Below, piece after piece: positions 4,529 to 59,626 of a stretch of DNA of 64,000 bases. A program made the position numbers and the translations under genes. Where the stretch lies: the IMG/VR virus record IMGVR_UViG_3300010403_000705, positions 62,001 through 126,000 of that record. One strand, 5' to 3'. Position 1 is the stretch's first letter; the number at the start of each line of letters is the position of its first letter. A model generated the notes under the pieces. It was not told the DNA's origin. It did no database searches and saw nothing but the letters and a program-made list of their open reading frames with translations.

Positions 4529-5113
4529 TTGAATACTATTGTTACGGAAGCTACTGAACATGGCGAAATGCCTATCGATATTTATCAAAAATTGTCTAAT
4601 GATAGAATATTATTTATATGTGATGTAATAGATGATAAATTAGCTACTGATATAGTTGCTACCCTCTTATTAAAAGATCTAGAAGATTCTGAGAAAAAAA
4701 TAACCCTTTTTATAAATTCTGAGGGAGGTGATATAAGGAATGTTCTTATGATTTATGATATGATGTGCTTAATACAAGCCCCCATAGAAACGGTATGTAT
4801 TGGTGCAGCTATGGATGAAGCTGCAATAATATTACTTGCTGGTACACAGGGTATGAGATTAGCTACTCCCAATTCGATAATATCTATAAGTCAATTAGTT
4901 CATGATTGGACAAGTTATTCTGATCTAACAGATGCAAAGAAAATTCTTGATCGATCTATGCAAGATAACAAAAAAATGATGGATATAATTGCTAAAAGTG
5001 TTGGTAAAACATTAAAACAGGTCATTGAGGATTTTAATAGGCGAGTTTTTATGAATTGTAACCAAGCAGTTAAATATGGCTTAATTGATAAGGTGGTTGT
5101 TTTTAACAAATGA
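4529..5113 (+). CDS. ClpP-like subunit lacking catalytic Ser/His (ClpR-like)
   Basis: ClpP fold motifs DIYQKLSNDRILF, LFINSEGG, A..YGLIDKV; nucleophile position reads GAAMDEAA and His position reads ISISQL. Confidence 0.85.
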   Translation: MNTIVTEATEHGEMPIDIYQKLSNDRILFICDVIDDKLATDIVATLLLKDLEDSEKKITLFINSEGGDIRNVLMIYDMMCLIQAPIETVCIGAAMDEAAIILLAGTQGMRLATPNSIISISQLVHDWTSYSDLTDAKKILDRSMQDNKKMMDIIAKSVGKTLKQVIEDFNRRVFMNCNQAVKYGLIDKVVVFNK

Positions 5114-5709
5114 AAACAAAAATGAAAGATCACGATGATCAAGATAACTTGGATAATATTCCAATTTTTCCGGGTTATGTAGAGACTTACATTAAACTAG
5201 CAAAAGATAGAATCATTTTCTTAAACGAAGATGTGACAAAGCAAGCTGCTGCTAATTTATCAGCTCTTTTGTTATATTATGATAATGAAAATTCTGATGA
5301 AAGTATTAGTATTTACATTCATTGTAGTGGGGGAGATGCTGCGGGATTAGTAAATATTTATGATGTTATGCAAATGATAAAATCACCTATCAAAACTATA
5401 TGTATTGGCAAGTGTTATTCTGCGGGTGCTATAATTTTGGCTGCTGGAAACGTTGGTGAAAGGTATGCATTTAAACATTCTAAGATTATGATACATGGCG
5501 TTCAGGCAGGTTTTCCAATTTTAGGTCATGATATAACGAACTCAAAAAGCTATTATGATTTTCTAAAGGATAGTAATGATAAGATAATGAAGATATTAAG
5601 TGATCATACTGGACATTCCTTAGAAAAAATTAAGCAAGATTGTTTAAGAGATGTTTGGTTAGACGCTAAACAGGCATTAGATTATGGTTTAATTGACGAA
5701 ATATTATGA
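5110..5709 (+). CDS. clpP: ATP-dependent Clp protease proteolytic subunit
   Basis: Intact triad: GKCYSAGA (Ser), IMIHG (His), RDVWL (Asp); ALDYGLIDEI. Confidence 0.92.
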   Translation: MKTKMKDHDDQDNLDNIPIFPGYVETYIKLAKDRIIFLNEDVTKQAAANLSALLLYYDNENSDESISIYIHCSGGDAAGLVNIYDVMQMIKSPIKTICIGKCYSAGAIILAAGNVGERYAFKHSKIMIHGVQAGFPILGHDITNSKSYYDFLKDSNDKIMKILSDHTGHSLEKIKQDCLRDVWLDAKQALDYGLIDEIL

Positions 5710-25963: not shown

Positions 25964-26290
25964 ATGAAACAAAAAAGTGGACAAGAAATATTTTATACTG
26001 ATATCAATGTTATGATAACATCTATTAAACAATTTACGCAAGATAATTGTGCATATGTAGAAATTCACGATGATCTAAAAAGATTATATTATGGTTGGTT
26101 TTGTCCAAAAACTAATACATATTTTTATATGCAAGCTTCTCATTTTAGAAATCAAAGAAAAGGTCTCGCCCTACCTTTTGATTCATATTTAAAAAGAAAA
26201 ATAGCTAGTATACCATTGAGTAATTGTAAAAATGATAAAGAATATAATTCTCTTAAAGAAAAACTTAATAAATTGAAAGCATTTTGGTGA
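25964..26290 (+). CDS. hypothetical protein with C-terminal LKAFW tag
   Basis: 108 aa, ends KEKLNKLKAFW. Confidence 0.6.
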   Translation: MKQKSGQEIFYTDINVMITSIKQFTQDNCAYVEIHDDLKRLYYGWFCPKTNTYFYMQASHFRNQRKGLALPFDSYLKRKIASIPLSNCKNDKEYNSLKEKLNKLKAFW

Positions 26291-26605: not shown

Positions 26606-27394
26606 ATGTCTAATGAATTACGATTATCTGTTAGTAAAACAAAGACATTCTTAGATTGCAAGGCAAAATATAAATATTCATATATTGAAAAATTGCCTAA
26701 AAAAGATTGGGAATTTCATACATTTGGTAAATTTTGTCACAAGGTGTTGGAAGATTTTCATAATGCATATATTAATGGCTCATCAGAGCCATATAATATA
26801 GTAATGTCAAAAGCATTTAAAGATTCATTGAATGAATATAAATCTGTTATGACAACAGAAATGAGGCGAGATTGTTGGAAAATTATTGATCAATACTTAA
26901 AAATTGTAAGTAGTGATAAAAAAAATAATTTATCTGCCAATGTTATTGCTTGCGAAAAAAATTTCGAATTTTTAGTAGGCGGTAAAGTTATTTTAAATGG
27001 TATGATTGACAGGATACAAATTGATGACGATAATGTAATACATGTTTGTGATTATAAAACAGTCAAAAATAAAAAATATTTAAAAAATGATTTTTTCCAA
27101 TTATTAACATACGCATATGTTATAATTTCTGAAGACCCTTCAATTGAAAAAGTTCGCGCCTCATATATTTTGCTTAGACATGATTTTGAATATATTACTA
27201 CTGAATTTACTGTTCCAGAAATTTTGAAGATTCAAGATAAGTATCTTGAATATGCTAATCAGATTTTAAAAGAAAAAGAATATGCTCCCAATCCAACTGC
27301 TTTGTGTAATTTTTGTGATTATTTGAATATGTGTCCAGAAGGTAAAGCAAAGTCTTATGGGCAGAATATTTATGGAGAGGTAACGTATGGGTAA
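26606..27394 (+). CDS. PD-(D/E)XK RecB/Cas4-like exonuclease
   Basis: LSVSK..FLDC, H..LE, CEKNF, GMIDRI, DYKT, QLLTY, C-terminal CxxC...C Fe-S ligands. Confidence 0.88.
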   Translation: MSNELRLSVSKTKTFLDCKAKYKYSYIEKLPKKDWEFHTFGKFCHKVLEDFHNAYINGSSEPYNIVMSKAFKDSLNEYKSVMTTEMRRDCWKIIDQYLKIVSSDKKNNLSANVIACEKNFEFLVGGKVILNGMIDRIQIDDDNVIHVCDYKTVKNKKYLKNDFFQLLTYAYVIISEDPSIEKVRASYILLRHDFEYITTEFTVPEILKIQDKYLEYANQILKEKEYAPNPTALCNFCDYLNMCPEGKAKSYGQNIYGEVTYG

Positions 27395-27590
27395 CAATTA
27401 CTATTTTACATACGAAACTAATCAGTATAAAATATATTACATGTACGAAGCACCTACTCCACATAGATTAGATGGACCCGCAATTGAATACGCAAATGGC
27501 ACAAAAGTGTGGTGTTATAAGGGAAAAATTATATCCTGTTCTTCACAAGAACAATTTGAAAAATATTTAAAAATGAAAATTTTTTGGTAA
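27387..27590 (+). CDS. HRxDGPA-repeat small protein with C-terminal MKIFW tag
   Basis: HRLDGPAIEYANGTKVWCYKGK; ends SQEQFEKYLKMKIFW. Confidence 0.7.
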   Translation: MGNNYYFTYETNQYKIYYMYEAPTPHRLDGPAIEYANGTKVWCYKGKIISCSSQEQFEKYLKMKIFW

Positions 27591-28059: not shown

Positions 28060-29307
28060 ATGGAGATAAATGTAAAAGAATTAGAGCCATGTAAGTTAAG
28101 CATTCAGTACATCGCGGATGCCGGAGAAATTCTTGAAAAACGTGCGCAAATTTTACAAGTCTTTAAGAAAGCTCCTGTTCCTGGATTTAGACCAGGGAAA
28201 GGAACTTTAGATGCAATTAAGATTCATTACAAAAATCAAATTGAAGAATCTTTGAAACGCGGTTTAGCAGAAGATGCTTATCATAATACTATTTTTGAGA
28301 AAAAATTAAGACCTCATGGAGCGCCATTTTTTAAGTCTCTGATGATAGCTGATGGAAAATTTACTTGTGATTTTGATTTACATGTTAAACCTGATTTTGA
28401 ATTGGCTCCTTATAAAGAATTAGAAATACCAAAACCTCACGAAGATTTTTCTTCAGTAGAATTCAGTGAGAAAATATTACAAGAATTAAGACGTAAATTT
28501 GGAGATGCTTATCCATATACAGAAAATGATTTTGTGCAAGATAGTGATAATGTAATTATTGATTATCAAGGTACTGTGGACGGTGTAAAAATAGATAATT
28601 TGTCGGCACAGGGAGAAATGCTAACTGTAGGTCGTAGTCAATTACTAAACTTTGATGATAATTTATTAGGCATGGTTTTAGGAGAGACAAGAGAATTTGA
28701 TGTTAAAGTGCCAGAGAATGGTTTACCATCTTTAGCTGGTAAACTAGTTCATTTTAAAGTTACTCTTAATATGGGTTCTAAAACTGAATTATGCGCACTT
28801 GATGACTCCTTAGCTGTAAAAATGGGAAAAAAAGATTTCTCCGAACTAAAAGAATTTGTACATGCAGCTGCTATGAGCAGAACTTCTAACAGTTCCAAAC
28901 TAGCATTAAATGAAGCCATAACAAACAGATTAGTGAATGATAACAAATTTGCGGTTCCCAATTGGTTGAGCTTATCTGAAGCGCGTTATTTAGCACATAA
29001 CTCAAAGATGGATTGGGAAACTATGAATGATGTCGATAAAGAAAAATATTTGCAAATGGCGGAAAGTAATGTTAAATTATCTCTAATTTTAGATAGAATT
29101 AGAGATTTAGAGCCAGAAGCACAAATAACTGATCAAGAAGTTTTCGATATTGTTAAACAAAATTTAACTAAAATGAATAATCAAAAATCTATTGATGATA
29201 CTATAAAAGAAATGAATAGAACTGGCTATCTGCAAATTCTATTTTCTAGAATTAAAGATGAGTTTGTGTTAGATTTTATAACCAAAAGCGTTAAAGTAAT
29301 TGAATAA
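28060..29307 (+). CDS. tig: trigger factor
   Basis: Ribosome-binding PGFRPGK, FKBP-like DNVIIDYQGTVDG...F..NLLGM..GETREF...LAGK.V.F.V, C-terminal SurA-like helices. Confidence 0.92.
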   Translation: MEINVKELEPCKLSIQYIADAGEILEKRAQILQVFKKAPVPGFRPGKGTLDAIKIHYKNQIEESLKRGLAEDAYHNTIFEKKLRPHGAPFFKSLMIADGKFTCDFDLHVKPDFELAPYKELEIPKPHEDFSSVEFSEKILQELRRKFGDAYPYTENDFVQDSDNVIIDYQGTVDGVKIDNLSAQGEMLTVGRSQLLNFDDNLLGMVLGETREFDVKVPENGLPSLAGKLVHFKVTLNMGSKTELCALDDSLAVKMGKKDFSELKEFVHAAAMSRTSNSSKLALNEAITNRLVNDNKFAVPNWLSLSEARYLAHNSKMDWETMNDVDKEKYLQMAESNVKLSLILDRIRDLEPEAQITDQEVFDIVKQNLTKMNNQKSIDDTIKEMNRTGYLQILFSRIKDEFVLDFITKSVKVIE

Positions 29308-31546: not shown

Positions 31547-34500
31547 ATGTTTATGATAGAGTTTGTGTCTTTGCATAATCAAACGTATTTTTCTATTTTA
31601 GATTCTTTAATTTCTCCTAAAGATCTCTTTTTAAGAGCAAAAGAGTTAGGACAATCTGCTATAGCAATAACGGATCATGGTACTTTGGCATCAGCATGGG
31701 ATGCATTAAAAGCTTCTAAAGAAACTGGTGTCAAATTAATTATTGGGTGTGAATGTTATTTTCAAAATGATTCTCAAAACACTGAAGATAAATTTAGACA
31801 TATTGTACTTATAGCCAAAAACGCCATTGGATATAGAAATTTACTAACGATAAATAAGAAAGGTTTTGACCAAGGGGTTTTTCTAGGTAAAAGAGTCTAT
31901 TCTGTAGTAGATTGGAAACTGTTGAAACAATATTCTGATGGATTGATCTGTTTAACTGCTTGCGGTAACGGTATTGTTTCTCAGCTTCTAACAAATGGTA
32001 AATTTGAAGAGGCTGAAGAAACATTGTTGAAATTGAAAGATATTTTTGGTTCTAATTTAGGAATTGAAATTCAGCCCAATAACATGGATCGTGGCTCTAA
32101 TTTTTATAGTGATAAAATAGACCAAAAATTTTTAAATCGCAGACTAATAGATTTAGGAAAAAAATATGACATCAAGATTGTAGCTGCATGTAACGCACAC
32201 TATTTGAAAAAAGAAGATCATGCAATGCATGATATATTTCTAGCCATTGGCTCTCATCAGCCAGTCTATTCTAATTTTAGATTAAAATATACAGTACCTG
32301 AATTTTATCTCAAATCTGGAGAAGAGATTAAGAATTTTTTCTCTAGGAATTTTGGAGAAGAATTTGCTGAACAGATTTGTAAAAATAGTATATATTTTTC
32401 CTCTTTATGTGAGTATCCTGATTGGATAGATCCTAAATTTTCTAATCCTTCTGGAAAAGAGTTACCAATTTTTCCAGTAAAAGATGAAAAAGATTATTTA
32501 GATTTTTGTCAATGGGTGTCATGTCAGCCAGAGGAAATAAGAAAATTAGAAGAAGATAAATTATTTCTTCGTTATAGATGTTTGATAAAATTTAACTCAA
32601 AAGTAAAAAATATTAATAATGAACAACGTATTCTGTATGACAGCCGTATAGCCGAAGAGTTAGATGTATTGGAATACCATGGATTTTCTAGCTATATGTT
32701 AATTGTGGCTGATTATATTGATTGGGCAAGAAATAATAATATTGCGGTAGGAGAGGGTCGTGGTTCGGTAGGTGGATCTTTGATTGCATATTTATTAGGT
32801 ATTCATCAAGCAGATCCAATTAAATATAATTTAATTTTTGCTAGATTTCATAATAAGGAGAAATCTAGTTTTCCAGATATTGATACTGATTTTGCTCCAT
32901 CTGGACGCGCTTTAGTACAAGAGTATTTAAAGAAAAAGTATGGAGAAGATAATGTGGCACATGTTTCTAATGTAAATACTATCACTCCAAAAGTTTATGT
33001 AAGAGATATCGCTAGAGCTTGCGAATTAGGTGGCTCACGTGAAGATGCGATCAAAATTGGAAATGATGTAGCAGACTGTATTCCGGCTGATATTCATTCT
33101 ATTGAGGATGCTTTGGTGAAGGTGCCTTTGTTTGCAGAATATTGTAAAAAATATTCTGAGTTTGTCAAATACAAAGATATTTGCGGAAAATACCGAGCAT
33201 GGTCTACTCATGCTGGTGGTATTATTATTTCTGCTAGACCTTTAACCGGACTAGTACCATTAAGAAAAGATAAAGATGGAGCTTTAGCTATTGAATATGA
33301 TAAAGATAAAGCTGAAGAAAATGGTCTCGTAAAAATGGATACTTTAGGATTATCTACTTTAGATATTATTGGTCAAACTATTAAATTAATTAAAGAATCT
33401 GGGAAACCATTACCTCCTGAACCGCTTAATTATGAGGAATATGATAAATCAACTTATGATTTAGTATCTGAAGGAGATACATTTTGTGTATTTCAGTTAG
33501 GTACTAGTGGCGGGACCATTGATCTATGCCGTAGAATTAAACCAAAATCAGTTAATGATATTAGTTATGTTAATTCTTTAGCTAGACCATCTGCGCGAGA
33601 TATGCGCACGGATTTTATTGCTACCAAAGATGGTAAAAAGCCATTCTCATTATTGCATCCTAATTTAGGAAGAGCTTTTAATAACACATACGGATTTGGT
33701 CTATATGAAGAATCCTTGATGTATTTAGCACAAGATGTCGCTGGTTGGAGTTTGCATTCTGCAGATCGTCTACGTAAATTAACCAAAGAAAAAGGTAAAA
33801 ATCCTAAAAAAGCACAGCAATGGAGAAATGAATTCATTAATGATGCAACAAAAAATTCGATAGATGAAGAAATAGCAAAAAAAATCTGGGATGAAGTAGT
33901 AGATAAATTTCAAGGTTACGGTTTTAATATGTCACATAGCATATTGTATTCTATGACCAGTTATAAAACTGCTTATTTAAAAGCCCATTACCCAGTAGAA
34001 TTTTTGATGGCTAACTTAATGGCAGAGGTAAAATCTAATACCCCGGATGCCAAAGCAAATATCGAAAAAATAAAGAAAGAGTTAAGGGAGCACAAAGTCA
34101 AGTTAATGCCGCCAGATATTAATAATTCTCAACTAAGTTATACTATTTCTAAAGATAATAAGTTATTAACTGGATTGGATGCCTTGAAATTCGTAGGCGA
34201 AGATGCTATAAAAGATATAATTGAAAAAAGACCTTTTAAAAGTTTTTTTGATTTTATGGTTAGAGTTGATTCAAGAAAAGTGCGAGCAAATGCAATACAA
34301 GCTTTGGCTGCTGCAGGTAGTATGGATATTTTTGGTATCCCCAGAAAATTAGTGTACTTATATTGTTCTGATTACAGAAAAAAATTACAGGTTTGGTTAA
34401 AAAAGCATGATGTTTCCAAAGAAGAATTCATATACCCTTGGCCACAAGAATTGGAATGGAAAATACATGAATTATATGCTTTAGAACAATATTATTTAGG

Positions 34501-35074
34501 AGAATCATTTGTTTGTAAACCAGCAGATGCATATGGTAAATTTTTTAAAGAAGACCATAAAACTATTAATGATATTAAACGATCTAAAGATAGGACTAAA
34601 ATATTTCCTATTAAAGCTATAGTAAGGAGCTTTTTTGAATTTAAAGTTAAAAAAGAAACTAGTAAATATTATGGCCAATCCATGATAAAAGCCATAATTG
34701 AGGATATGAATGGAGAACAGTGTTCTTGTACTATTTTTCCAGATAGATGGAAGACGATACAAAACCGATTAAAAGAAGTACATAGTAAAGCGGTATTTGA
34801 CACTGGTTTAGCTCTTAGTTTTGCTGGAAATACAAATAACTATGAAGATGACATTGGTATAATCTTAGAAGACTTATTCAATGTGGCTCTCATTCCATCA
34901 TTGCCAAATGATCTAAAAGCTAAAAAAATTAATTTAAAAGAATTAAAGGCAAAAATTGTAAAAGAAGAAAATAGTATATCTTCCAATAAAGATTCTCTAT
35001 TAGAAGAAATTGAGGACTCCCTTATAAATGATGGCTTGTTAGATTTGGATGTGGAATTTGAAAATGATGATTAA
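31547..35074 (+). CDS. dnaE: DNA polymerase III alpha subunit (family C)
   Basis: PHP domain (AITDHG), GRGSVGGSL, FPDIDTDF, HAGG, KMDTLGL, YGFNMSHS, AYLKAHYP, OB fold. Confidence 0.97.
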   Translation: MFMIEFVSLHNQTYFSILDSLISPKDLFLRAKELGQSAIAITDHGTLASAWDALKASKETGVKLIIGCECYFQNDSQNTEDKFRHIVLIAKNAIGYRNLLTINKKGFDQGVFLGKRVYSVVDWKLLKQYSDGLICLTACGNGIVSQLLTNGKFEEAEETLLKLKDIFGSNLGIEIQPNNMDRGSNFYSDKIDQKFLNRRLIDLGKKYDIKIVAACNAHYLKKEDHAMHDIFLAIGSHQPVYSNFRLKYTVPEFYLKSGEEIKNFFSRNFGEEFAEQICKNSIYFSSLCEYPDWIDPKFSNPSGKELPIFPVKDEKDYLDFCQWVSCQPEEIRKLEEDKLFLRYRCLIKFNSKVKNINNEQRILYDSRIAEELDVLEYHGFSSYMLIVADYIDWARNNNIAVGEGRGSVGGSLIAYLLGIHQADPIKYNLIFARFHNKEKSSFPDIDTDFAPSGRALVQEYLKKKYGEDNVAHVSNVNTITPKVYVRDIARACELGGSREDAIKIGNDVADCIPADIHSIEDALVKVPLFAEYCKKYSEFVKYKDICGKYRAWSTHAGGIIISARPLTGLVPLRKDKDGALAIEYDKDKAEENGLVKMDTLGLSTLDIIGQTIKLIKESGKPLPPEPLNYEEYDKSTYDLVSEGDTFCVFQLGTSGGTIDLCRRIKPKSVNDISYVNSLARPSARDMRTDFIATKDGKKPFSLLHPNLGRAFNNTYGFGLYEESLMYLAQDVAGWSLHSADRLRKLTKEKGKNPKKAQQWRNEFINDATKNSIDEEIAKKIWDEVVDKFQGYGFNMSHSILYSMTSYKTAYLKAHYPVEFLMANLMAEVKSNTPDAKANIEKIKKELREHKVKLMPPDINNSQLSYTISKDNKLLTGLDALKFVGEDAIKDIIEKRPFKSFFDFMVRVDSRKVRANAIQALAAAGSMDIFGIPRKLVYLYCSDYRKKLQVWLKKHDVSKEEFIYPWPQELEWKIHELYALEQYYLGESFVCKPADAYGKFFKEDHKTINDIKRSKDRTKIFPIKAIVRSFFEFKVKKETSKYYGQSMIKAIIEDMNGEQCSCTIFPDRWKTIQNRLKEVHSKAVFDTGLALSFAGNTNNYEDDIGIILEDLFNVALIPSLPNDLKAKKINLKELKAKIVKEENSISSNKDSLLEEIEDSLINDGLLDLDVEFENDD

Positions 35075-39797: not shown

Positions 39798-40114
39798 TGT
39801 CTAGCGATATAGCAATAGCAGTTACAGGTCTACCAAATGCAATGTCAACGTCAAAAAAGCCATCTTATTTAATAATTTTAGAAGATAATAATACAAAAAG
39901 TAAAGTTGTTAAAAAATTTATTACGCTTGATAAGCCAGAACTTTTGCAGGGTTTTGTTCAAGCAAAGGGTTTTTTTTCTGAAGCACCTGAAGAAGAAATA
40001 ATTAAAAATTTTTCTGAACTCTTGACTTCTACTTCTAAGGATTTAATATTAGAAGTGTTAATACCGTGGCATAAAATTTCTTATATGAGAAGTTTAATTT
40101 TTAAACAAAAATGA
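39797..40114 (+). CDS. hypothetical protein
   Basis: 105 aa ORF coupled to recA. Confidence 0.6.
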   Translation: MSSDIAIAVTGLPNAMSTSKKPSYLIILEDNNTKSKVVKKFITLDKPELLQGFVQAKGFFSEAPEEEIIKNFSELLTSTSKDLILEVLIPWHKISYMRSLIFKQK

Positions 40115-40557
40115 TATTTACTAATCAAGCGCTAAATAATGTAAAATTTTTAAATGAACTTGTGTTAATTGGGGAGGACTTTGATGCTGAAAACCACGTA
40201 ATTGAATTTTTAAATATTATTGATTTCTCTAGCAAAATAACAACACTCAAAAAATTGATTCTAGATATGGAAGTACAAATAGTTAGGTGGGATCTGGCAG
40301 CCACAGATTTATTTTTCAATTCAGATCTGTATCAATATGTTATTGATACATTAGGAAAAGATTTGTATAGAAAGAATGGTTCCATTTACTTATGGGACAT
40401 CCAGTTACATTTTTTAGACGATTTCATATCTGATAGAATCCTATGCTTGAATAGATATTTAGAGAACCTTGAAACATTGAAGACCAGATATATTTCTGTT
40501 GCAAAAATAGATACAAAAATTGTAAAAAGATTATTAGATTTAAAAGCATTTTGGTAA
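40111..40557 (+). CDS. hypothetical protein with C-terminal LKAFW tag
   Basis: 148 aa, ATGA overlap, ends IVKRLLDLKAFW. Confidence 0.6.
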   Translation: MIFTNQALNNVKFLNELVLIGEDFDAENHVIEFLNIIDFSSKITTLKKLILDMEVQIVRWDLAATDLFFNSDLYQYVIDTLGKDLYRKNGSIYLWDIQLHFLDDFISDRILCLNRYLENLETLKTRYISVAKIDTKIVKRLLDLKAFW

Positions 40558-41972: not shown

Positions 41973-42536
41973 ATGAAAACGGTGCTTGGTTTTGATGTAT
42001 CTAGTTCCACAATTGGCTGGTGTGTTTTAGAAATTAGTGATGAGAGTATTATAAAATATACTGATTCTGGATATTTTAAGCCCGTTAAAAAAGGATCTAT
42101 AATTGATCGCTTGGTCGATACTAGAAAAAAAATACAAGATATTATCTATAAATATAAACCAGATTATATTGGTATTGAAGATTTAATAAAATTTATGCCT
42201 AAGAGCACTGCTACAACTGTAGTAATGTTAACAACTTTTAATCGTATGGTATGTCTAACTTCTTATGATTATTTAACTAGTAATCCAGGTTTATTTAATG
42301 TTATGAGTATTAGGCACGGATTAAAAATCTCTAAAATAATTCCAAAAAAAGAAGATATGCCAGAACTTGTGTCTAAACATCTAGGAATTATTTTTCCCTA
42401 TGAGAGAGTATTAAAAGGCAAGAAAAATGGTACAATAAAAATAGAAAATTATGATAGGGCAGATGGCATGGCAGTGGCTTTATATTATGCATTTTTGTTA
42501 ACGGGAAAAATTAAGCACAAGGGCAAGAATAAATGA
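41973..42536 (+). CDS. ruvC: RuvC-like Holliday junction resolvase
   Basis: VLGFDVSSSTIGW, KPDYIGIED, DRADGMAVA. Confidence 0.85.
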   Translation: MKTVLGFDVSSSTIGWCVLEISDESIIKYTDSGYFKPVKKGSIIDRLVDTRKKIQDIIYKYKPDYIGIEDLIKFMPKSTATTVVMLTTFNRMVCLTSYDYLTSNPGLFNVMSIRHGLKISKIIPKKEDMPELVSKHLGIIFPYERVLKGKKNGTIKIENYDRADGMAVALYYAFLLTGKIKHKGKNK

Positions 42537-43477
42537 ATCTATCAGAAGCGTATTCAATTTTAGAATTATCACCCAATTCTTCAGCGGATGAAGTTAAAAA
42601 AAAGTACAGAGAATTTACAAAAAAATATCATCCAGATATTAATAAAGAAGAAAATTCTGAGGATAGGTTTAAGAAAATTAATGAGGCTTATAACTGTATA
42701 AATAATGGGAAAAATTCGGACGCTGATTCATTTACTGGTTTTCATAACCCTTTTGTGAATAAGACTACCTTCCAAGCTGAAAATATCCAACTATATACGA
42801 CAATTTCTTTTAAAGAATCTGTTTTAGGGTGTCAAAAAGAACTATGTTTTAGTAGGAATAGTAAATGCACGAATTGTAATGGTAATGGTTTTATTCGTAT
42901 AAATAATGGATGTGATAGATGTCATGGCAAAGGACAAATTGTTGGTAAACAAGGTAACATGATATTTACACGAACATGTGATAAATGTATGGGACAGAAC
43001 AATTCTTCTCAGTGTAATATATGTTTAGGCACAGGACATGTAAATATGCAGGTGTCAATTAATGTAAATATTCCTGGAGGTGTTGTCAGTGGTAATATTT
43101 TAAGACTAAGTGGTTTCGGAAACTATATAGGTAGTTTTATAAATATGGACCAATATACTGAAGCACACCTACATATAACAGTGATTATGGATGAAGGTTT
43201 AACTTTAGAAAATAATGACGTTATATCCAGGATAAATATTACTTTATTGGAGGCGTTACAAGGATCGCAAAAAACTGTAAAAACTATTCTTGGAGATTAC
43301 ATAATCTCCATACCCCCTTTATCTAAAAACAAAGAAGAAATTAACATACCAAATTTAGGTGTTAATGGAATGGGTAATCAAAAAGTTATATTAGATGTAT
43401 CATATCCATCTAATATACAAGATGTAATTAATGTGTTATCTAATGATGAGGAGTTATTTCCGTGCCATTCTCAATGA
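42533..43477 (+). CDS. dnaJ: DnaJ (Hsp40) chaperone
   Basis: J domain with HPD, CxxCxGxG repeats, C-terminal substrate-binding domain. Confidence 0.92.
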   Translation: MNLSEAYSILELSPNSSADEVKKKYREFTKKYHPDINKEENSEDRFKKINEAYNCINNGKNSDADSFTGFHNPFVNKTTFQAENIQLYTTISFKESVLGCQKELCFSRNSKCTNCNGNGFIRINNGCDRCHGKGQIVGKQGNMIFTRTCDKCMGQNNSSQCNICLGTGHVNMQVSINVNIPGGVVSGNILRLSGFGNYIGSFINMDQYTEAHLHITVIMDEGLTLENNDVISRINITLLEALQGSQKTVKTILGDYIISIPPLSKNKEEINIPNLGVNGMGNQKVILDVSYPSNIQDVINVLSNDEELFPCHSQ

Positions 43478-45049: not shown

Positions 45050-45199
45050 TATAATAGTGATAGTATTATTGAAGAAAAACAAGATGTAAAATTTAATAAA
45101 TTTCTTAGTAGAAGCGAATTATCTAGACAATACAATTGTGGGAAGACAACAATAAGAGATATTTTAATAAGACATGATGTTAAAATATTAAGGAGTTAA
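45050..45199 (+). pseudogene. start-less HTH remnant, probably the 3' end of a homing endonuclease
   Basis: Open frame with no start codon: SRSELSRQYNCGKTTIRDILIRHDVKI. Confidence 0.4.
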
Positions 45200-45202
45200 T
45201 TT

Positions 45203-45646
45203 ATGGTTGAAAAAAGAACTAATCGATCAGATCGCTACCAGTGGGTACTTTTGGAGACAGTTTGTTCAAATGATATGATGGAAGCGTTTTCCAACGAAGA
45301 AAGTATTTATAACAGATTAAATCCCTTTCAATATAGTGAAGATTTAATGAATTTAGAAGATCAATTAAAAAAAGAATTTTGGCGAGTTGTAGAAACTTTA
45401 TTAACTCCTAGACAAAAAGAGGTAATTAAACTATATGCAGATGGCTATACACAAATGGAAATAGCTAAAATGTTAAATGTTAATCAGAGTTCAATTACTA
45501 AATCTTTAAATGGAAATGTTGATTATAAAAATGGAAAAAAAATATATGGCGGAGCTCGTAAGAAGATTAGAAAGATAATAGAAAATGACGATAAAATTAA
45601 AGAGATCTTGAAAAAAATGGATGAGGTTCGTGAATCAAGATGGTAA
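45203..45646 (+). CDS. sigma-70 region 4/LuxR-type HTH transcription factor
   Basis: LTPRQKEVIKL..DGYTQMEIAKMLNVNQSSITKSL. Confidence 0.8.
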   Translation: MVEKRTNRSDRYQWVLLETVCSNDMMEAFSNEESIYNRLNPFQYSEDLMNLEDQLKKEFWRVVETLLTPRQKEVIKLYADGYTQMEIAKMLNVNQSSITKSLNGNVDYKNGKKIYGGARKKIRKIIENDDKIKEILKKMDEVRESRW

Positions 45647-45778
45647 AAATACACTAATATAAATAATTTAATCAGAATACTAAAATGTAAAGCTTTTTGG
45701 TAATGACTACTAATAAAGTATAGAATTTATCAATATTTCTTTATCTATGATAGGTATATTGTATTTACTGGAGACGTA

Positions 45779-46234
45779 ATGTCAAAATTTTCAATAGATT
45801 ACTCAAGGTTAGAAAATAAAATTTACAAAAAAGCTTATAGACTTAAGGATGTAAAAGATCAGCTTGAAACGGTTGCTTTTGATGTAGTAAGATTTAAAGA
45901 CGGTGATAAGGGTGCGGATCTATGGCAAGTTCAAAGTTCTGATGATGGAGATTACATAGTGTCTTTATACCAACAGGACGAGGAAAAAACGGCTGCTTTA
46001 TGGGATGTAACAATAAGTAAAGTAGCAGGTGATTTACAAATTTCCTATAAAGGAGATCCGTTAGTAAAGATTACTTCTTCTAAATTGGGTATACCTAGTG
46101 AACAATTGATTAAAGTAAAAGATTACTTACCAGCTAGACTAGCAGAGAACAAAAAATTGGTCAAATCCTTATTAAATGAATTGCCAAATGCTGTTAAACA
46201 AGCTGTATTAAATAAATATCCAGAGTTGGTCTAA
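45779..46234 (+). CDS. hypothetical protein, morphogenesis cluster
   Basis: 151 aa, GGAG RBS; KKAY and EEKTA motifs. Confidence 0.65.
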   Translation: MSKFSIDYSRLENKIYKKAYRLKDVKDQLETVAFDVVRFKDGDKGADLWQVQSSDDGDYIVSLYQQDEEKTAALWDVTISKVAGDLQISYKGDPLVKITSSKLGIPSEQLIKVKDYLPARLAENKKLVKSLLNELPNAVKQAVLNKYPELV

Positions 46235-57802: not shown

Positions 57803-59626
57803 ATGGCTATAAATAAATCTACAAAAAAATGGGTTGGACCATCCAATTCAGAACAGTTTTTACAAAAAAGATCTACTGTTCCACAAGTAAGTGCCCTAAT
57901 GGCTCAAGGTATTTCGAGTGTTAGAAGAGATATTTTATCTGAAGAAGTCGATCAAGGATTTTTTAGAGACGGATCTGGTCCTTCTAATAAACAGAATGAT
58001 TTAACACATAATTCTCATGTCACCGCATCAGTAGGTGTAAAAAAATACGCACAAGTATTAAGTGGAGGTGGTAATTATCGTGGTGGTAATGGAGATACTG
58101 TTAAACAAACGCCAGAAGTATATTCTCCACTGTGGCTTAATAGTAACTTAAACCTTCCTAGAGATAGAGCAACTATTAATGCATGGTGTCGTAGTTTTTA
58201 TGCTTTAAATCCCTTCGTACATAACGCAATTAATTTACATAGTACATATCCAATTAGTAAACTAAATATTAAATGTTCGAATAAAGATATTGAAAAATTC
58301 TTCAATGATATGAGTGAAGAAATAGATTTAATGAATATTTGCGTACAAATAGCTCAAGAATATTGGTTACTAGGTGAAGCATTTGTATATTCTGAATTAG
58401 ATGAAAGTAAAGGCAAATGGAGTAGGTTATTGATTCAAAATCCTGATCATATGCTTGTTAAACGTACTGTAGTGACCACTGACCCTATAATTATGTTGCG
58501 TCCAGATGAAAATTTAAAAAACATTGTATTTTCTAATAAACCAACAGACATTGAACAACGTAAACAACTAAATCAATATATTATAGATTCTGTTAAACGT
58601 GGAGAAAATATCACACTAGATAATTTTCATGTATCTCATTTAGCAAGAAGAATTAGCCCGTATGAAATAAGAGGCACTGGTCTTCCTGTTTGTATATTTA
58701 GACAATTAATGTTATTTGATAAGTTAAGAGAATCTAAATATGCACAGGCTGATAATATGATTAATCCATTAACTCTAGTAAAAATTGGCACAGATGGACC
58801 TGAAGGCTTACATCCAACATTTGGTGATTTAGAAGCATGGAGAAATATTTTTGAAGAAGCACAATATGATAAAGATTTTAAAATCTTTACACACGCTGGT
58901 ATTGATGTGCAGAGAGTGGGGTATGGTCAAGGCATATATGATATCTCTGGAGATATCACTCAAATAATTAAAGAAATTTATGTTGGCTTACAAGTTCCGC
59001 CAGTATTGATGGATGGTGGTGCAGATACAACTTATGCTAATGGTGGTGTGGCGCTTGATGTATTAAGACAACGATACATGCAGTTCCGTAATATGATGTC
59101 TGCTTGGTTGAAAAGACAAATATTTGCTCCAATATCAAAAATTCAGGGATTTTATGATTATTCTGGTGGAGAAAAACAACTTATAGTACCAGAGATTGAC
59201 TGGAATCATATGTCATTATTTGATGCTGGTGATTATATTAATACTTTAGTTACTCTTACACAAGGTCAAGATGATCAAAAACGTGCTTCTTTACACACAT
59301 TGTATCGTTCTATGGGTCTTGAATTTGAAGATGAAAATAGAAAAATACGTAAAGAAGCAATTCAAAATGCAATTGTAAAAAAAGAAAAAATGGCTTTAGA
59401 AGCATTAGATTTAAATTCACTAAGAGCTTTAGATGAAGAAGAGGAAATTCCTCAAGCACAAACTCAACAGCCAGGAACAGAAAACGCAGTACCGGGTCAA
59501 ATGCCTTCTCCTACTAGTATGCCTGGATTAGATTTAGGTGCACCTCCTGGTATGTCAGCTTCTCCAATGCCTTCAGGACCAGCATCAGGACCTACTGATT
59601 CTGCACCTCCTCCTGTTCCCGCATAA
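57803..59626 (+). CDS. portal protein
   Basis: Directly after terminase; FYALNPFVHNAINLHSTYP, EYWLLGEAF, ISPYEIRGT; Pro-rich C-terminal tail. Confidence 0.8.
   Translation: MAINKSTKKWVGPSNSEQFLQKRSTVPQVSALMAQGISSVRRDILSEEVDQGFFRDGSGPSNKQNDLTHNSHVTASVGVKKYAQVLSGGGNYRGGNGDTVKQTPEVYSPLWLNSNLNLPRDRATINAWCRSFYALNPFVHNAINLHSTYPISKLNIKCSNKDIEKFFNDMSEEIDLMNICVQIAQEYWLLGEAFVYSELDESKGKWSRLLIQNPDHMLVKRTVVTTDPIIMLRPDENLKNIVFSNKPTDIEQRKQLNQYIIDSVKRGENITLDNFHVSHLARRISPYEIRGTGLPVCIFRQLMLFDKLRESKYAQADNMINPLTLVKIGTDGPEGLHPTFGDLEAWRNIFEEAQYDKDFKIFTHAGIDVQRVGYGQGIYDISGDITQIIKEIYVGLQVPPVLMDGGADTTYANGGVALDVLRQRYMQFRNMMSAWLKRQIFAPISKIQGFYDYSGGEKQLIVPEIDWNHMSLFDAGDYINTLVTLTQGQDDQKRASLHTLYRSMGLEFEDENRKIRKEAIQNAIVKKEKMALEALDLNSLRALDEEEEIPQAQTQQPGTENAVPGQMPSPTSMPGLDLGAPPGMSASPMPSGPASGPTDSAPPPVPA

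What the first reader, a model, noticed from the sequence alone, without database searches (positions are those of the whole stretch)
45640..45703. Orphan KAFW tag sits in frame directly behind the stop codon of the sigma-like gene
Seen: after the TAA (45644-45646) of ORF 45203-45646, the same frame continues KYTNINNLIRILKCKAFW* to 45703, a complete copy of the tag with no gene of its own. An ATG at 45640 (ATG GTA AAA A TAC...) would give a 20-aa tag-only peptide, MVKYTNINNLIRILKCKAFW, with one A fewer. Inference, three options: read-through makes a tagged form of the transcription factor; a frameshifted minigene makes a decoy peptide; or this is the remaining 3' end of a deleted tagged gene.
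Basis: partly seen in the sequence, partly recalled or inferred. Interest (0 to 1): 0.65.

Follow-up and report, generated by a model that had tools for sequence, protein, structure and literature searches.

The report
Leftover tail of a deleted gene
The 'orphan KAFW tag' behind the transcription-factor gene is the decayed last ~15 codons of a small accessory gene that related huge phages still carry intact at this spot, so it is an ordinary deletion scar and not a read-through extension or a mini-gene.

Summary
ORF 45203-45646 ends in TGG-TAA, and the same frame continues as KYTNINNLIRILKCKAFW* to 45703. In all 80 related loci (huge phages, 350-480 kb) the HTH gene stops after the same invariant Trp (73 TAA, 7 TGA). 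None carries a fused tag. The spacer to the next conserved gene varies from 84 to 2472 nt. It is a hot spot holding GIY-YIG endonucleases, a TnpB-like gene and accessory genes. In 9 loci an intact 52-77 aa gene lies there and ends ...LYDILMDEEKLRVLVSKLRNKAFW*. It sits in all three frames relative to the HTH gene. A profile of that gene, run against all 20,276 six-frame segments of this 433-kb genome, ranks the orphan first and aligns it to the profile's last 14 positions. The last 25 nt are 92% identical to the gene's end in L007. The orphan has no in-frame start codon, lacks the LYDIL.DEEK half of the module, and has lost one residue that is invariant in intact copies. The genome has no ochre-suppressor tRNA, and the region has no stimulatory RNA fold and no terminator. 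An independent assembly gives the same A5 run. Verdict: pseudogene fragment, low interest. The KAFW C-terminal module itself (15 or more genes here) is real and unexplained.

The parts
45203..45646 (+). Gene for a 147-aa HTH protein (sigma-70 region 4 / LuxR type). It ends at an invariant Trp followed by TAA.
   Evidence: The alignment of 16 homologues shows 89% mean column identity and an invariant W147. All 80 relatives end TGG plus stop.
45644..45646 (+). Ancestral TAA stop of the HTH gene, not a recent nonsense mutation.
   Evidence: Relatives have a stop at the same codon: TAA in 73 and TGA in 7.
45640..45657 (+). Five-codon ORF ATG GTA AAA ATA CAC TAA (MVKIH*), opened by the ATG inside AGATGGTAA. 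It is out of frame with the tag. The A5 run is at 45645-45649.
   Evidence: Sequence read. In L070 and L083 the intact small gene starts at the equivalent ATGGTAA overlap. Here the frame is lost after three codons.
45647..45703 (+). Open stretch of 18 codons plus TAA, in frame with the HTH gene: KYTNINNLIRILKCKAFW*. It has no in-frame ATG, GTG or TTG.
45659..45703 (+). The relic proper: the last 14 codons and stop of a small accessory gene of the LEIP...LYDILMDEEKLRVLVSKLRNKAFW family.
   Evidence: The profile built from 9 intact syntenic genes aligns residues 5-18 of the segment to profile positions 56-69 of 69. It scores 13.8 bits, E 0.078, and ranks 1 of 20,276 six-frame segments of the genome. 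Window 45681-45705 is 92% identical over 25 nt to the 3' end of the L007 gene.
45722..45778 (+). Conserved non-coding block (TATCAATATTTCTTTATCTATGATAGG...GGAGACGTA) directly upstream of the next gene. It is probably that gene's promoter, leader and ribosome-binding site, and it marks the right-hand boundary of the variable spacer.
   Evidence: It is near-invariant in 59 distinct upstream sequences. Its core occurs once in the window and once in the genome.
45779..46234 (+). Next conserved gene (151 aa, no family match). It serves as the right-hand synteny anchor.
   Evidence: Homologues at 54-85% identity were found downstream of the HTH gene in 77 of 80 loci. There are no Pfam or PHROG hits.

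Best explanation
The 57 bases after the HTH gene's stop are a pseudogene fragment. In this lineage of 350-480 kb phages, the spacer between the HTH gene and the next conserved gene is a gain-and-loss hot spot. In some members it holds a small gene of 52-77 codons. That gene has a variable N-terminal half, and its C-terminal 24 residues (LYDILMDEEKLRVLVSKLRNKAFW) are almost invariant at the protein level.

In the ancestor of this genome, an out-of-frame deletion of roughly 110-170 nt removed the gene's start and body. That size is inferred. A second deletion removed the left part of the conserved non-coding block downstream. What remains is the last ~14 codons plus the stop. It lies in the HTH gene's frame, which has a one-in-three probability by chance.

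The remnant has no start codon. It is shielded from the HTH gene's ribosomes by the ancestral TAA. It has drifted at positions that intact copies never change. It is most likely not translated and has no function of its own. At most it now serves as spacer DNA upstream of the next gene's conserved control block.

Shown here: synteny, homology of the tail, conservation of the stop, absence of a start codon, and absence of a suppressor tRNA and of RNA structure. Inferred: the order and size of the deletions, and non-expression.
For: 1. The stop is ancestral. 80 of 80 related loci (65 distinct gene sequences) end the HTH gene at TGG plus TAA or TGA, and W147 is invariant.
2. The spacer is hypervariable, 84-2472 nt against 132 nt here. 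It contains GIY-YIG/NUMOD3 endonucleases (L033, L053), a TnpB/OrfB-like gene (L054) and other tagged genes (L004, L079).
3. Intact small genes ending ...KL[KR][NM]KAFW* lie in this spacer in L004/5, L006, L007, L010 (two copies), L033, L046, L070 and L083, in frames 0, 1 and 2 relative to the HTH gene.
4. Intermediate states of decay exist. L074 and L054 have tag ORFs without an ATG, and L011 has a tag with a 1-nt loss (KAFG).
5. The orphan is the top hit in the whole genome to the profile of these genes. It aligns to the profile's last 14 positions and scores above all 15 of the genome's own tagged genes.
6. At the DNA level, AAAGCTTTTTGGTAATG is identical to L007. There is 92% identity over 25 nt, compared with 79-81% in the flanking genes.
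7. The tail is degraded. Invariant K67 is Ile, the nearly invariant D57, E58, E59 and K60 are K, Y, T and N, and the LYDIL part is absent.
8. Nothing supports recoding. There is no UUA-anticodon tRNA among 39 tRNAs, no Rfam match, no fold better than shuffles (z = +0.78) and no terminator.
Against: The profile E-value alone (0.078 against 20,276 segments) is modest. Clear DNA homology is limited to about 25 nt. Without the synteny the case would be weak.

No close relative (above 90% identity in the HTH protein) was found, so the deletion cannot be dated or its breakpoints fixed. Expression could not be tested: the only public run is a DNA soil metagenome held as contigs, probably the source of the assembly. 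Rare A-run variants and low-level read-through are therefore not excluded.

A second short in-frame 'MKVFW*' follows another TAA at genome 431063-431092. Two such cases are still within the chance expectation.
Confidence: 0.86

Rival explanations
1. Stop-codon read-through of TAA 45644-45646 makes a minor, C-terminally tagged form of the HTH or sigma-like protein. That form would be recruited to whatever binds the KAFW module.
For: The tag is in frame with no further stop for 18 codons. The genome has many proteins with this C-terminus. It also encodes a suppressor-type tRNA (anticodon CUA), which shows that stop-codon decoding may be manipulated in this phage.
Against: The suppressor reads TAG, not TAA, and there is no UUA-anticodon tRNA. 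TAA is the commonest stop of long ORFs in the genome (311 of 519). By established knowledge UAA is read by both release factors. None of 80 relatives has a tag in frame directly behind the stop as a conserved feature, and the spacer sequence differs in almost every lineage. There is no downstream RNA structure. The tail lacks half the conserved module.
Confidence: 0.03
2. A mini-gene: ribosomes start at ATG 45640, coupled to termination of the HTH gene. By slippage in the A5 run, or in an A4 sub-population, they make the 20-aa tag-only peptide MVKYTNINNLIRILKCKAFW as a decoy for the tag's partner.
For: In L070 and L083 the intact small gene does start at the equivalent ATGGTAA overlap, so initiation at this ATG is plausible. 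A homopolymer run lies at the required place.
Against: As sequenced, the ORF is MVKIH*. An independent Logan assembly and the source contig both show A5 with no variant. An A5 run is short for transcriptional or translational slippage (general knowledge). No stimulatory structure is present. The ATG is an automatic by-product of Lys or Arg followed by Trp and a stop (AAATGG or AGATGG), and is present in about a third of the relatives (25 of 80), whether or not a small gene follows. The peptide would lack LYDIL.DEEK and the invariant Lys.
Confidence: 0.04
3. Chance: an AT-rich spacer happens to translate to a KAFW-like ending and has no historical link to a tagged gene.
For: About 1.4 K[AVSIT]FW-stop strings are expected per genome by chance. 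At least one other short example, at 431063-431092, looks like chance.
Against: The 11-residue pattern is expected only 0.18 times per genome. The segment ranks first of 20,276 against the profile of the gene that occupies this very spacer in relatives. There is a 17-nt identity with L007, followed by a near-identical downstream block.
Confidence: 0.05
4. The fragment is retained for a DNA- or RNA-level role. For example, its TTGGTA could serve as the -35 element of a promoter (TTGGTA-18-TAGAAT, 45697-45726) for the next gene, or it could act as a terminator.
For: A promoter-like match of 9 of 12 starts in the tag's last codons. TGGTAAT recurs at the left edge of the conserved block in many relatives.
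Against: Nine promoter-like sites were found in 800 nt against 5.2 expected, so the match is not informative. In relatives the distance from TGGTAA to the conserved block varies widely. No terminator, fold or Rfam family was found. Many relatives have a G+C-rich hairpin terminator here, and the window does not.
Confidence: 0.03

Closest known systems
Unnamed family of small hypothetical proteins (intact copies in L004-L083; P0001-P0026), with pattern ...LEIP...LYDILMDEEKLRVLVSKLRNKAFW-COOH
   Same: It occupies the same genomic position, between the HTH gene and the next conserved gene. It has the same last 14 residues in pattern, the same KAFW-stop, and 17 nt identical to the L007 copy.
   Different: The window copy has no start codon and no N-terminal half. 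It lacks the LYDIL.DEEK part of the module, and the invariant Lys is replaced. It is a fragment, not a member that could fold. The AF2 model of an intact member has three helices.
Gene remnants in variable regions of large phages that are rich in homing endonucleases, for example the hyperplastic regions of T4-like phages (general knowledge, not tested here)
   Same: A conserved gene pair flanks a spacer that differs between relatives. The spacer holds GIY-YIG/NUMOD3 endonucleases, a TnpB-like gene, small accessory genes and decayed pieces of them.
   Different: This lineage is uncultivated and has no match among GenBank phages. That the endonucleases caused this particular deletion is not shown.
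Programmed stop-codon read-through extensions, for example the Q-beta A1 protein (general knowledge)
   Same: An open in-frame stretch follows a stop codon.
   Different: The extension is not conserved in any relative. The stop is TAA, there is no cognate suppressor tRNA and no stimulatory structure.
Shared C-terminal docking tails of phage T4 proteins that bind the sliding clamp (gp43, gp55, gp33). This analogy comes from memory and is a lead only.
   Same: Several unrelated proteins of one phage end in the same short hydrophobic C-terminal peptide. In T4 one of them is a late transcription factor.
   Different: Here the transcription-factor-like protein never carries the tail in any of 81 genomes. 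No partner of the KAFW module is known. The phage DnaE ends in a different peptide (LDLDVEFENDD).

Membership tests
Small LEIP...LYDILMDEEKLRVLVSKLRNKAFW protein family (unnamed) | Lies between the HTH gene and the next conserved gene | tested here: met
   The intact genes in 9 loci and the orphan occupy the same spacer.
Small LEIP...LYDILMDEEKLRVLVSKLRNKAFW protein family (unnamed) | C-terminus K-A-F-W followed by a stop, preceded by the amphipathic L..L..KL pattern | tested here: met
   NLIRILKCKAFW* aligns to profile positions 56-69 and is the top hit in the genome.
Small LEIP...LYDILMDEEKLRVLVSKLRNKAFW protein family (unnamed) | Complete 24-residue module, including LYDIL, DEEK and the invariant Lys of SKL | tested here: not met
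   Alignment A2 gives Y52, I54, K67, L68 and K71-W74 as invariant. The window has a stop where D56 would be, K/Y/T/N for D/E/E/K, and Ile for K67.
Small LEIP...LYDILMDEEKLRVLVSKLRNKAFW protein family (unnamed) | An ORF of 45 aa or more with its own start codon | tested here: not met
   The stretch is 18 codons with no in-frame ATG, GTG or TTG.
Programmed stop-codon read-through | In-frame extension conserved among relatives | tested here: not met
   The downstream frame is unrelated or closed in the relatives. The small gene lies in frames 0, 1 and 2.
Programmed stop-codon read-through | A cognate suppressor tRNA, a leaky stop context or a stimulatory RNA structure | tested here: not met
   ARAGORN finds a CUA anticodon but no UUA anticodon. 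The fold z-score is +0.78. There is no Rfam hit.
Programmed frameshift or slippage mini-gene | Slippery run with length heterogeneity, or a downstream stimulator | tested here: inconclusive
   Only contigs were available. They show A5 with no variant. No structure was found. Raw reads were not available.
Intrinsic terminator | G+C-rich hairpin followed by a T run | tested here: not met
   No sites in 45100-45900. Relatives such as L008 and L020 do have one in this spacer.
Sigma-70 family (the upstream gene) | Region 4 helix-turn-helix | tested here: met
   PF08281, 26.7 bits against a cut-off of 25.7, residues 67-99. PHROG sigma-factor families match at E about 1e-6.
Sigma-70 family (the upstream gene) | Region 2 (core binding and -10 recognition) | tested here: not met
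   No region-2 family appears among the Pfam hits at E <= 0.01. PDB profile hits are mainly LuxR/GerE-type HTH proteins, all at E >= 0.01. 'Sigma-like' therefore remains unproven.

The most novel reading that the evidence does not exclude
The fragment may not be dead. Ribosomes terminating on the HTH gene could re-initiate at ATG 45640 and occasionally slip in the A5 run, or read through the TAA. That would yield a short peptide or an HTH fusion ending in KAFW, which competes with the genome's 15 or more KAFW-tailed proteins for their unknown common partner.
Probability: 0.03. Interest if true: 0.55.

Novelty: already known. Interest (0 to 1): 0.15.

Why it matters
For this finding, the result removes a tempting but wrong reading, a recoded and tagged transcription factor. 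It also shows that the spacer behind the HTH gene is a gene-turnover hot spot in a lineage of uncultivated 350-480 kb phages.

The result of wider value is indirect. The comparison exposed a 24-residue C-terminal module (LYDILMDEEKLRVLVSKLRNKAFW) that is kept almost invariant at the protein level, despite many synonymous changes, on otherwise variable small proteins. Shorter versions of it end 15 or more unrelated small proteins per genome. That pattern suggests a common docking partner, and it deserves study on the intact genes rather than on this fragment.

Tried and rejected
- DNA search of the region, and protein searches of the HTH protein and the 541-aa downstream protein, against GenBank phages found nothing.
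- An exact-pattern scan of IMG/VR for the relic found nothing.
- A metagenome scan allowing A4 to A6 found only the source contig, with A5.
- The sequencing-run search gave one soil DNA run held as contigs, identical to the window, so no read-level information on the A run could be obtained.
- Pfam and PHROG scans of the intact small genes gave only sub-threshold noise.
- The ESM Atlas gave no usable feature hit.
- The AF2 model of an intact member (pLDDT 78.5) had no PDB match at E <= 0.001.
- Rfam, an RNA fold and a terminator scan of the spacer were all negative.
- I considered that the repeated element might be a DNA motif rather than a peptide. I rejected this because the module varies freely at synonymous sites and the DNA of the genome's tags is dissimilar.
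- I considered that the orphan was copied from another tagged gene of the same genome. I rejected this because it scores higher against the syntenic family than any of those genes does.
- I did not run the complex predictor, because I make no binding claim.
- I did not run the exhaustive protein search, because the conclusion does not rest on absence of relatives.

Full report
**What is in the sequence**

The window is bases 62001-126000 of a 432,844-bp virus record (33% G+C; CheckV completeness estimate 97%). It comes from a soil metagenome.

- ORF 45203-45646 encodes a 147-aa protein. Its only family signal is a sigma-70 region-4 / LuxR-type helix-turn-helix at residues 67-99 (Pfam PF08281, 26.7 bits against a cut-off of 25.7).
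- The ORF ends AGA TGG TAA. The same frame then reads KYTNINNLIRILKCKAFW and stops at 45701-45703.
- An ATG at 45640 lies inside AGATGGTAA. As sequenced it opens only MVKIH*. With four A's instead of five it would read MVKYTNINNLIRILKCKAFW.

**Is the 'tag' real?**

Yes.

- Fifteen ORFs of 60 aa or more in the genome end in [LMNV]K[AVSIT]FW-stop. Three of them are in the window, ending at 26290, 27590 and 40557.
- Their N-terminal bodies are mostly unrelated to one another.
- K[AVSIT]FW-stop occurs 16 times in six frames, against 1.4 expected in third-order Markov genomes. An 11-residue version occurs 10 times against 0.18 expected.
- The KAFW-stop DNA pattern occurs 2-7 times in each of five related genomes of 360-480 kb. 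The reversed control pattern never occurs.
- One bare four-residue orphan could still be chance, so the case for the orphan has to rest on more than the motif.

**Relatives**

A scan of IMG/VR with the HTH protein returned 80 loci at 80-90% identity, many on contigs of 350-480 kb.

- In all 80 (65 distinct gene sequences) the gene ends at the same Trp followed by a stop: TAA in 73 and TGA in 7. W147 is invariant in the alignment. The stop is therefore ancestral, and no relative has a tagged form of this protein.
- The distance to the next conserved gene (the homologue of 45779-46234) ranges from 84 to 2472 nt. It is 132 nt in the window.
- The short spacers differ in almost every lineage, and many carry a G+C-rich hairpin terminator.
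- The long spacers carry GIY-YIG/NUMOD3 endonucleases (L033, L053), a TnpB/OrfB-like gene (L054), cysteine-rich ORFs of about 290 aa, and further KAFW- or SAFW-tailed genes (L004, 146 aa; L079, 85 aa).
- This spacer is a hot spot of gene gain and loss.

**The intact gene**

In L004/5, L006, L007, L010 (two copies), L033, L046, L070 and L083 the spacer holds an intact gene of 52-77 codons that ends ...LYDIL.DEEKL..L.SKL[KR][NM]KAFW*.

- Relative to the HTH gene it lies in frame 0, 1 or 2. No selection links the two frames.
- In L070 and L083 its ATG is the one inside the ATGGTAA overlap with the HTH stop.
- Decayed versions also exist. L074 and L054 have tag ORFs without an ATG. L011 has lost one T, giving KAFG.
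- A word search found 26 more members, all 'hypothetical protein'.
- In the 33-sequence alignment the last 24 residues are almost invariant while the N-terminal half is highly variable. Synonymous differences in the module are abundant, 254 of 900 codon comparisons. The constraint is therefore on the peptide, not on the DNA.
- An AlphaFold model (pLDDT 78.5) shows three helices, the last two formed by the module. It matches no solved structure, no Pfam or PHROG family, and nothing usable in the Atlas.

**The orphan is the tail of that gene**

- A profile of the nine intact syntenic genes was run against all 20,276 six-frame stop-to-stop segments of the genome. The orphan segment ranks first, at 13.8 bits and E 0.078. 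Its residues 5-18 align to the last 14 profile positions. It ranks above all 15 of the genome's own tagged genes.
- At the DNA level the window aligns to the last ~45 nt of the gene.
- AAAGCTTTTTGGTAATG is identical to L007. Window 45681-45705 is 92% identical to the 3' end of the L007 gene, compared with 79-81% for the flanking genes. The block downstream of the relic is nearly identical to L007.
- Compared with intact copies, the fragment lacks LYDIL. It has K-Y-T-N in place of D-E-E-K, and Ile in place of the invariant Lys. It has no in-frame ATG, GTG or TTG.
- Relative to an L007-like ancestor, about 160 nt are missing in at least two pieces. One piece removed the gene's start and body. 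The other removed the left part of the conserved non-coding block. The exact breakpoints are inferred, not shown.

**Tests of the other readings**

*Read-through*
- ARAGORN finds 39 tRNAs and a tmRNA in the genome. One tRNA has a CUA (amber) anticodon. None has a UUA anticodon that could read TAA.
- TAA is the commonest stop of long ORFs in the genome.
- The downstream frame is not conserved in relatives.

*Slippage*
- The Logan assembly of the only public run is identical over 2 kb, and so is the source contig. Both show A5 with no variant.
- These are contigs and probably the source of the record, so rare variants are not excluded.

*RNA or DNA element*
- There is no Rfam match, no fold better than shuffles (z = +0.78) and no terminator.
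- The promoter-like match that starts in the tag's last codons is one of nine in 800 nt, against 5.2 expected.

**Conclusion**

The feature is a pseudogene fragment, left by deletion of a small accessory gene in a hypervariable spacer. Its in-frame position behind the HTH gene is a one-in-three coincidence. Confidence is about 0.86. The kind of feature is ordinary, and interest is low.

The KAFW module on intact genes is the part that remains unexplained and worth attention. A near-invariant C-terminal peptide on variable bodies suggests a common binding partner. I did not test any partner and make no binding claim.

Noticed in passing
L004-L083 and P0001-P0026 (alignment A2); none intact in the window: The small-protein family has a variable N-terminal half but an almost invariant C-terminal 24 residues (DLYDILMDEEKLRVLVSKLRNKAFW). 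Synonymous changes are many, so selection acts on the peptide. This looks like a docking module for an unknown partner. No Pfam, PHROG or PDB match was found.
   Followed up: partly
window 25964-26290, 27387-27590, 40111-40557; G000:C1 207751-208080, 212408-212758, 230800-237507 (four genes, minus strand), 419678-430425 (six genes): Fifteen small ORFs with mostly unrelated bodies end in [LMNV]K[AVSIT]FW-stop, against 1.4 expected by chance. They lie partly in clusters. A variant ending KAFC-stop closes an ORF at G000:C1:47883. Related genomes have 2-7 exact KAFW-stop copies each.
   Followed up: partly
window 45722-45778: A non-coding block of about 57 nt (TATCAATATTTCTTTATCTATGATAGG...GGAGACGTA) directly upstream of gene 45779 is near-invariant in 59 distinct relatives and occurs once in the genome. 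It is a candidate promoter or leader of the downstream gene. In relatives the block extends further left (GGTAATATTCTGAAATC...), and that part is missing in the window.
   Followed up: partly
L008, L011, L020, L032, L036, L074, L083 and others, spacer after the HTH gene: The hexamer TGGTAA(T) recurs at the HTH gene's end, at the end of the tagged genes, after the terminator hairpins, and at the left edge of the conserved block. Inserts appear bracketed by copies of it. This may reflect microhomology used in insertion and deletion at this hot spot.
   Followed up: no
L033:3472-4149, L053:4212-5087, L054:2280-3293: The same spacer in relatives holds GIY-YIG/NUMOD3 homing-endonuclease genes and a TnpB/OrfB_IS605-like gene, so mobile elements target this site.
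   Followed up: yes
G000:C1:55645-55997 and 58637-58710 (upstream of the window): The phage genome encodes a tmRNA (tag peptide ANDNAFVPMAQAA) and 39 tRNAs, one with a CUA (amber-reading) anticodon. TAG is the rarest stop of long ORFs (55 of 519). Whether TAG is recoded was not examined. The stop in this finding is TAA.
   Followed up: no
G000:C1:431060-431092: A second short in-frame tag-like string (ILSIMKVFW*) follows the TAA of a 210-codon ORF (430430-431062). With only nine codons, it is within the chance expectation.
   Followed up: partly
window 31547-35074; also 4529-5709, 28060-29307, 42533-43477: The window encodes a DnaE-type Pol III alpha that ends LDLDVEFENDD. From memory, this resembles beta-clamp-binding tails; it was not tested. 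By Pfam it also encodes trigger factor. From reading the translations only, without a scan, it appears to encode two ClpP-like ORFs and a DnaJ-like protein, an unusual set of chaperone and protease genes for a phage.
   Followed up: no
window 27387-27590 and L079:4372-4626: Two tagged proteins have bodies with a YxNGK...HRxDGPA-type repeat, reminiscent of MORN-like repeats. Pfam gave no hit at E <= 0.01.
   Followed up: partly
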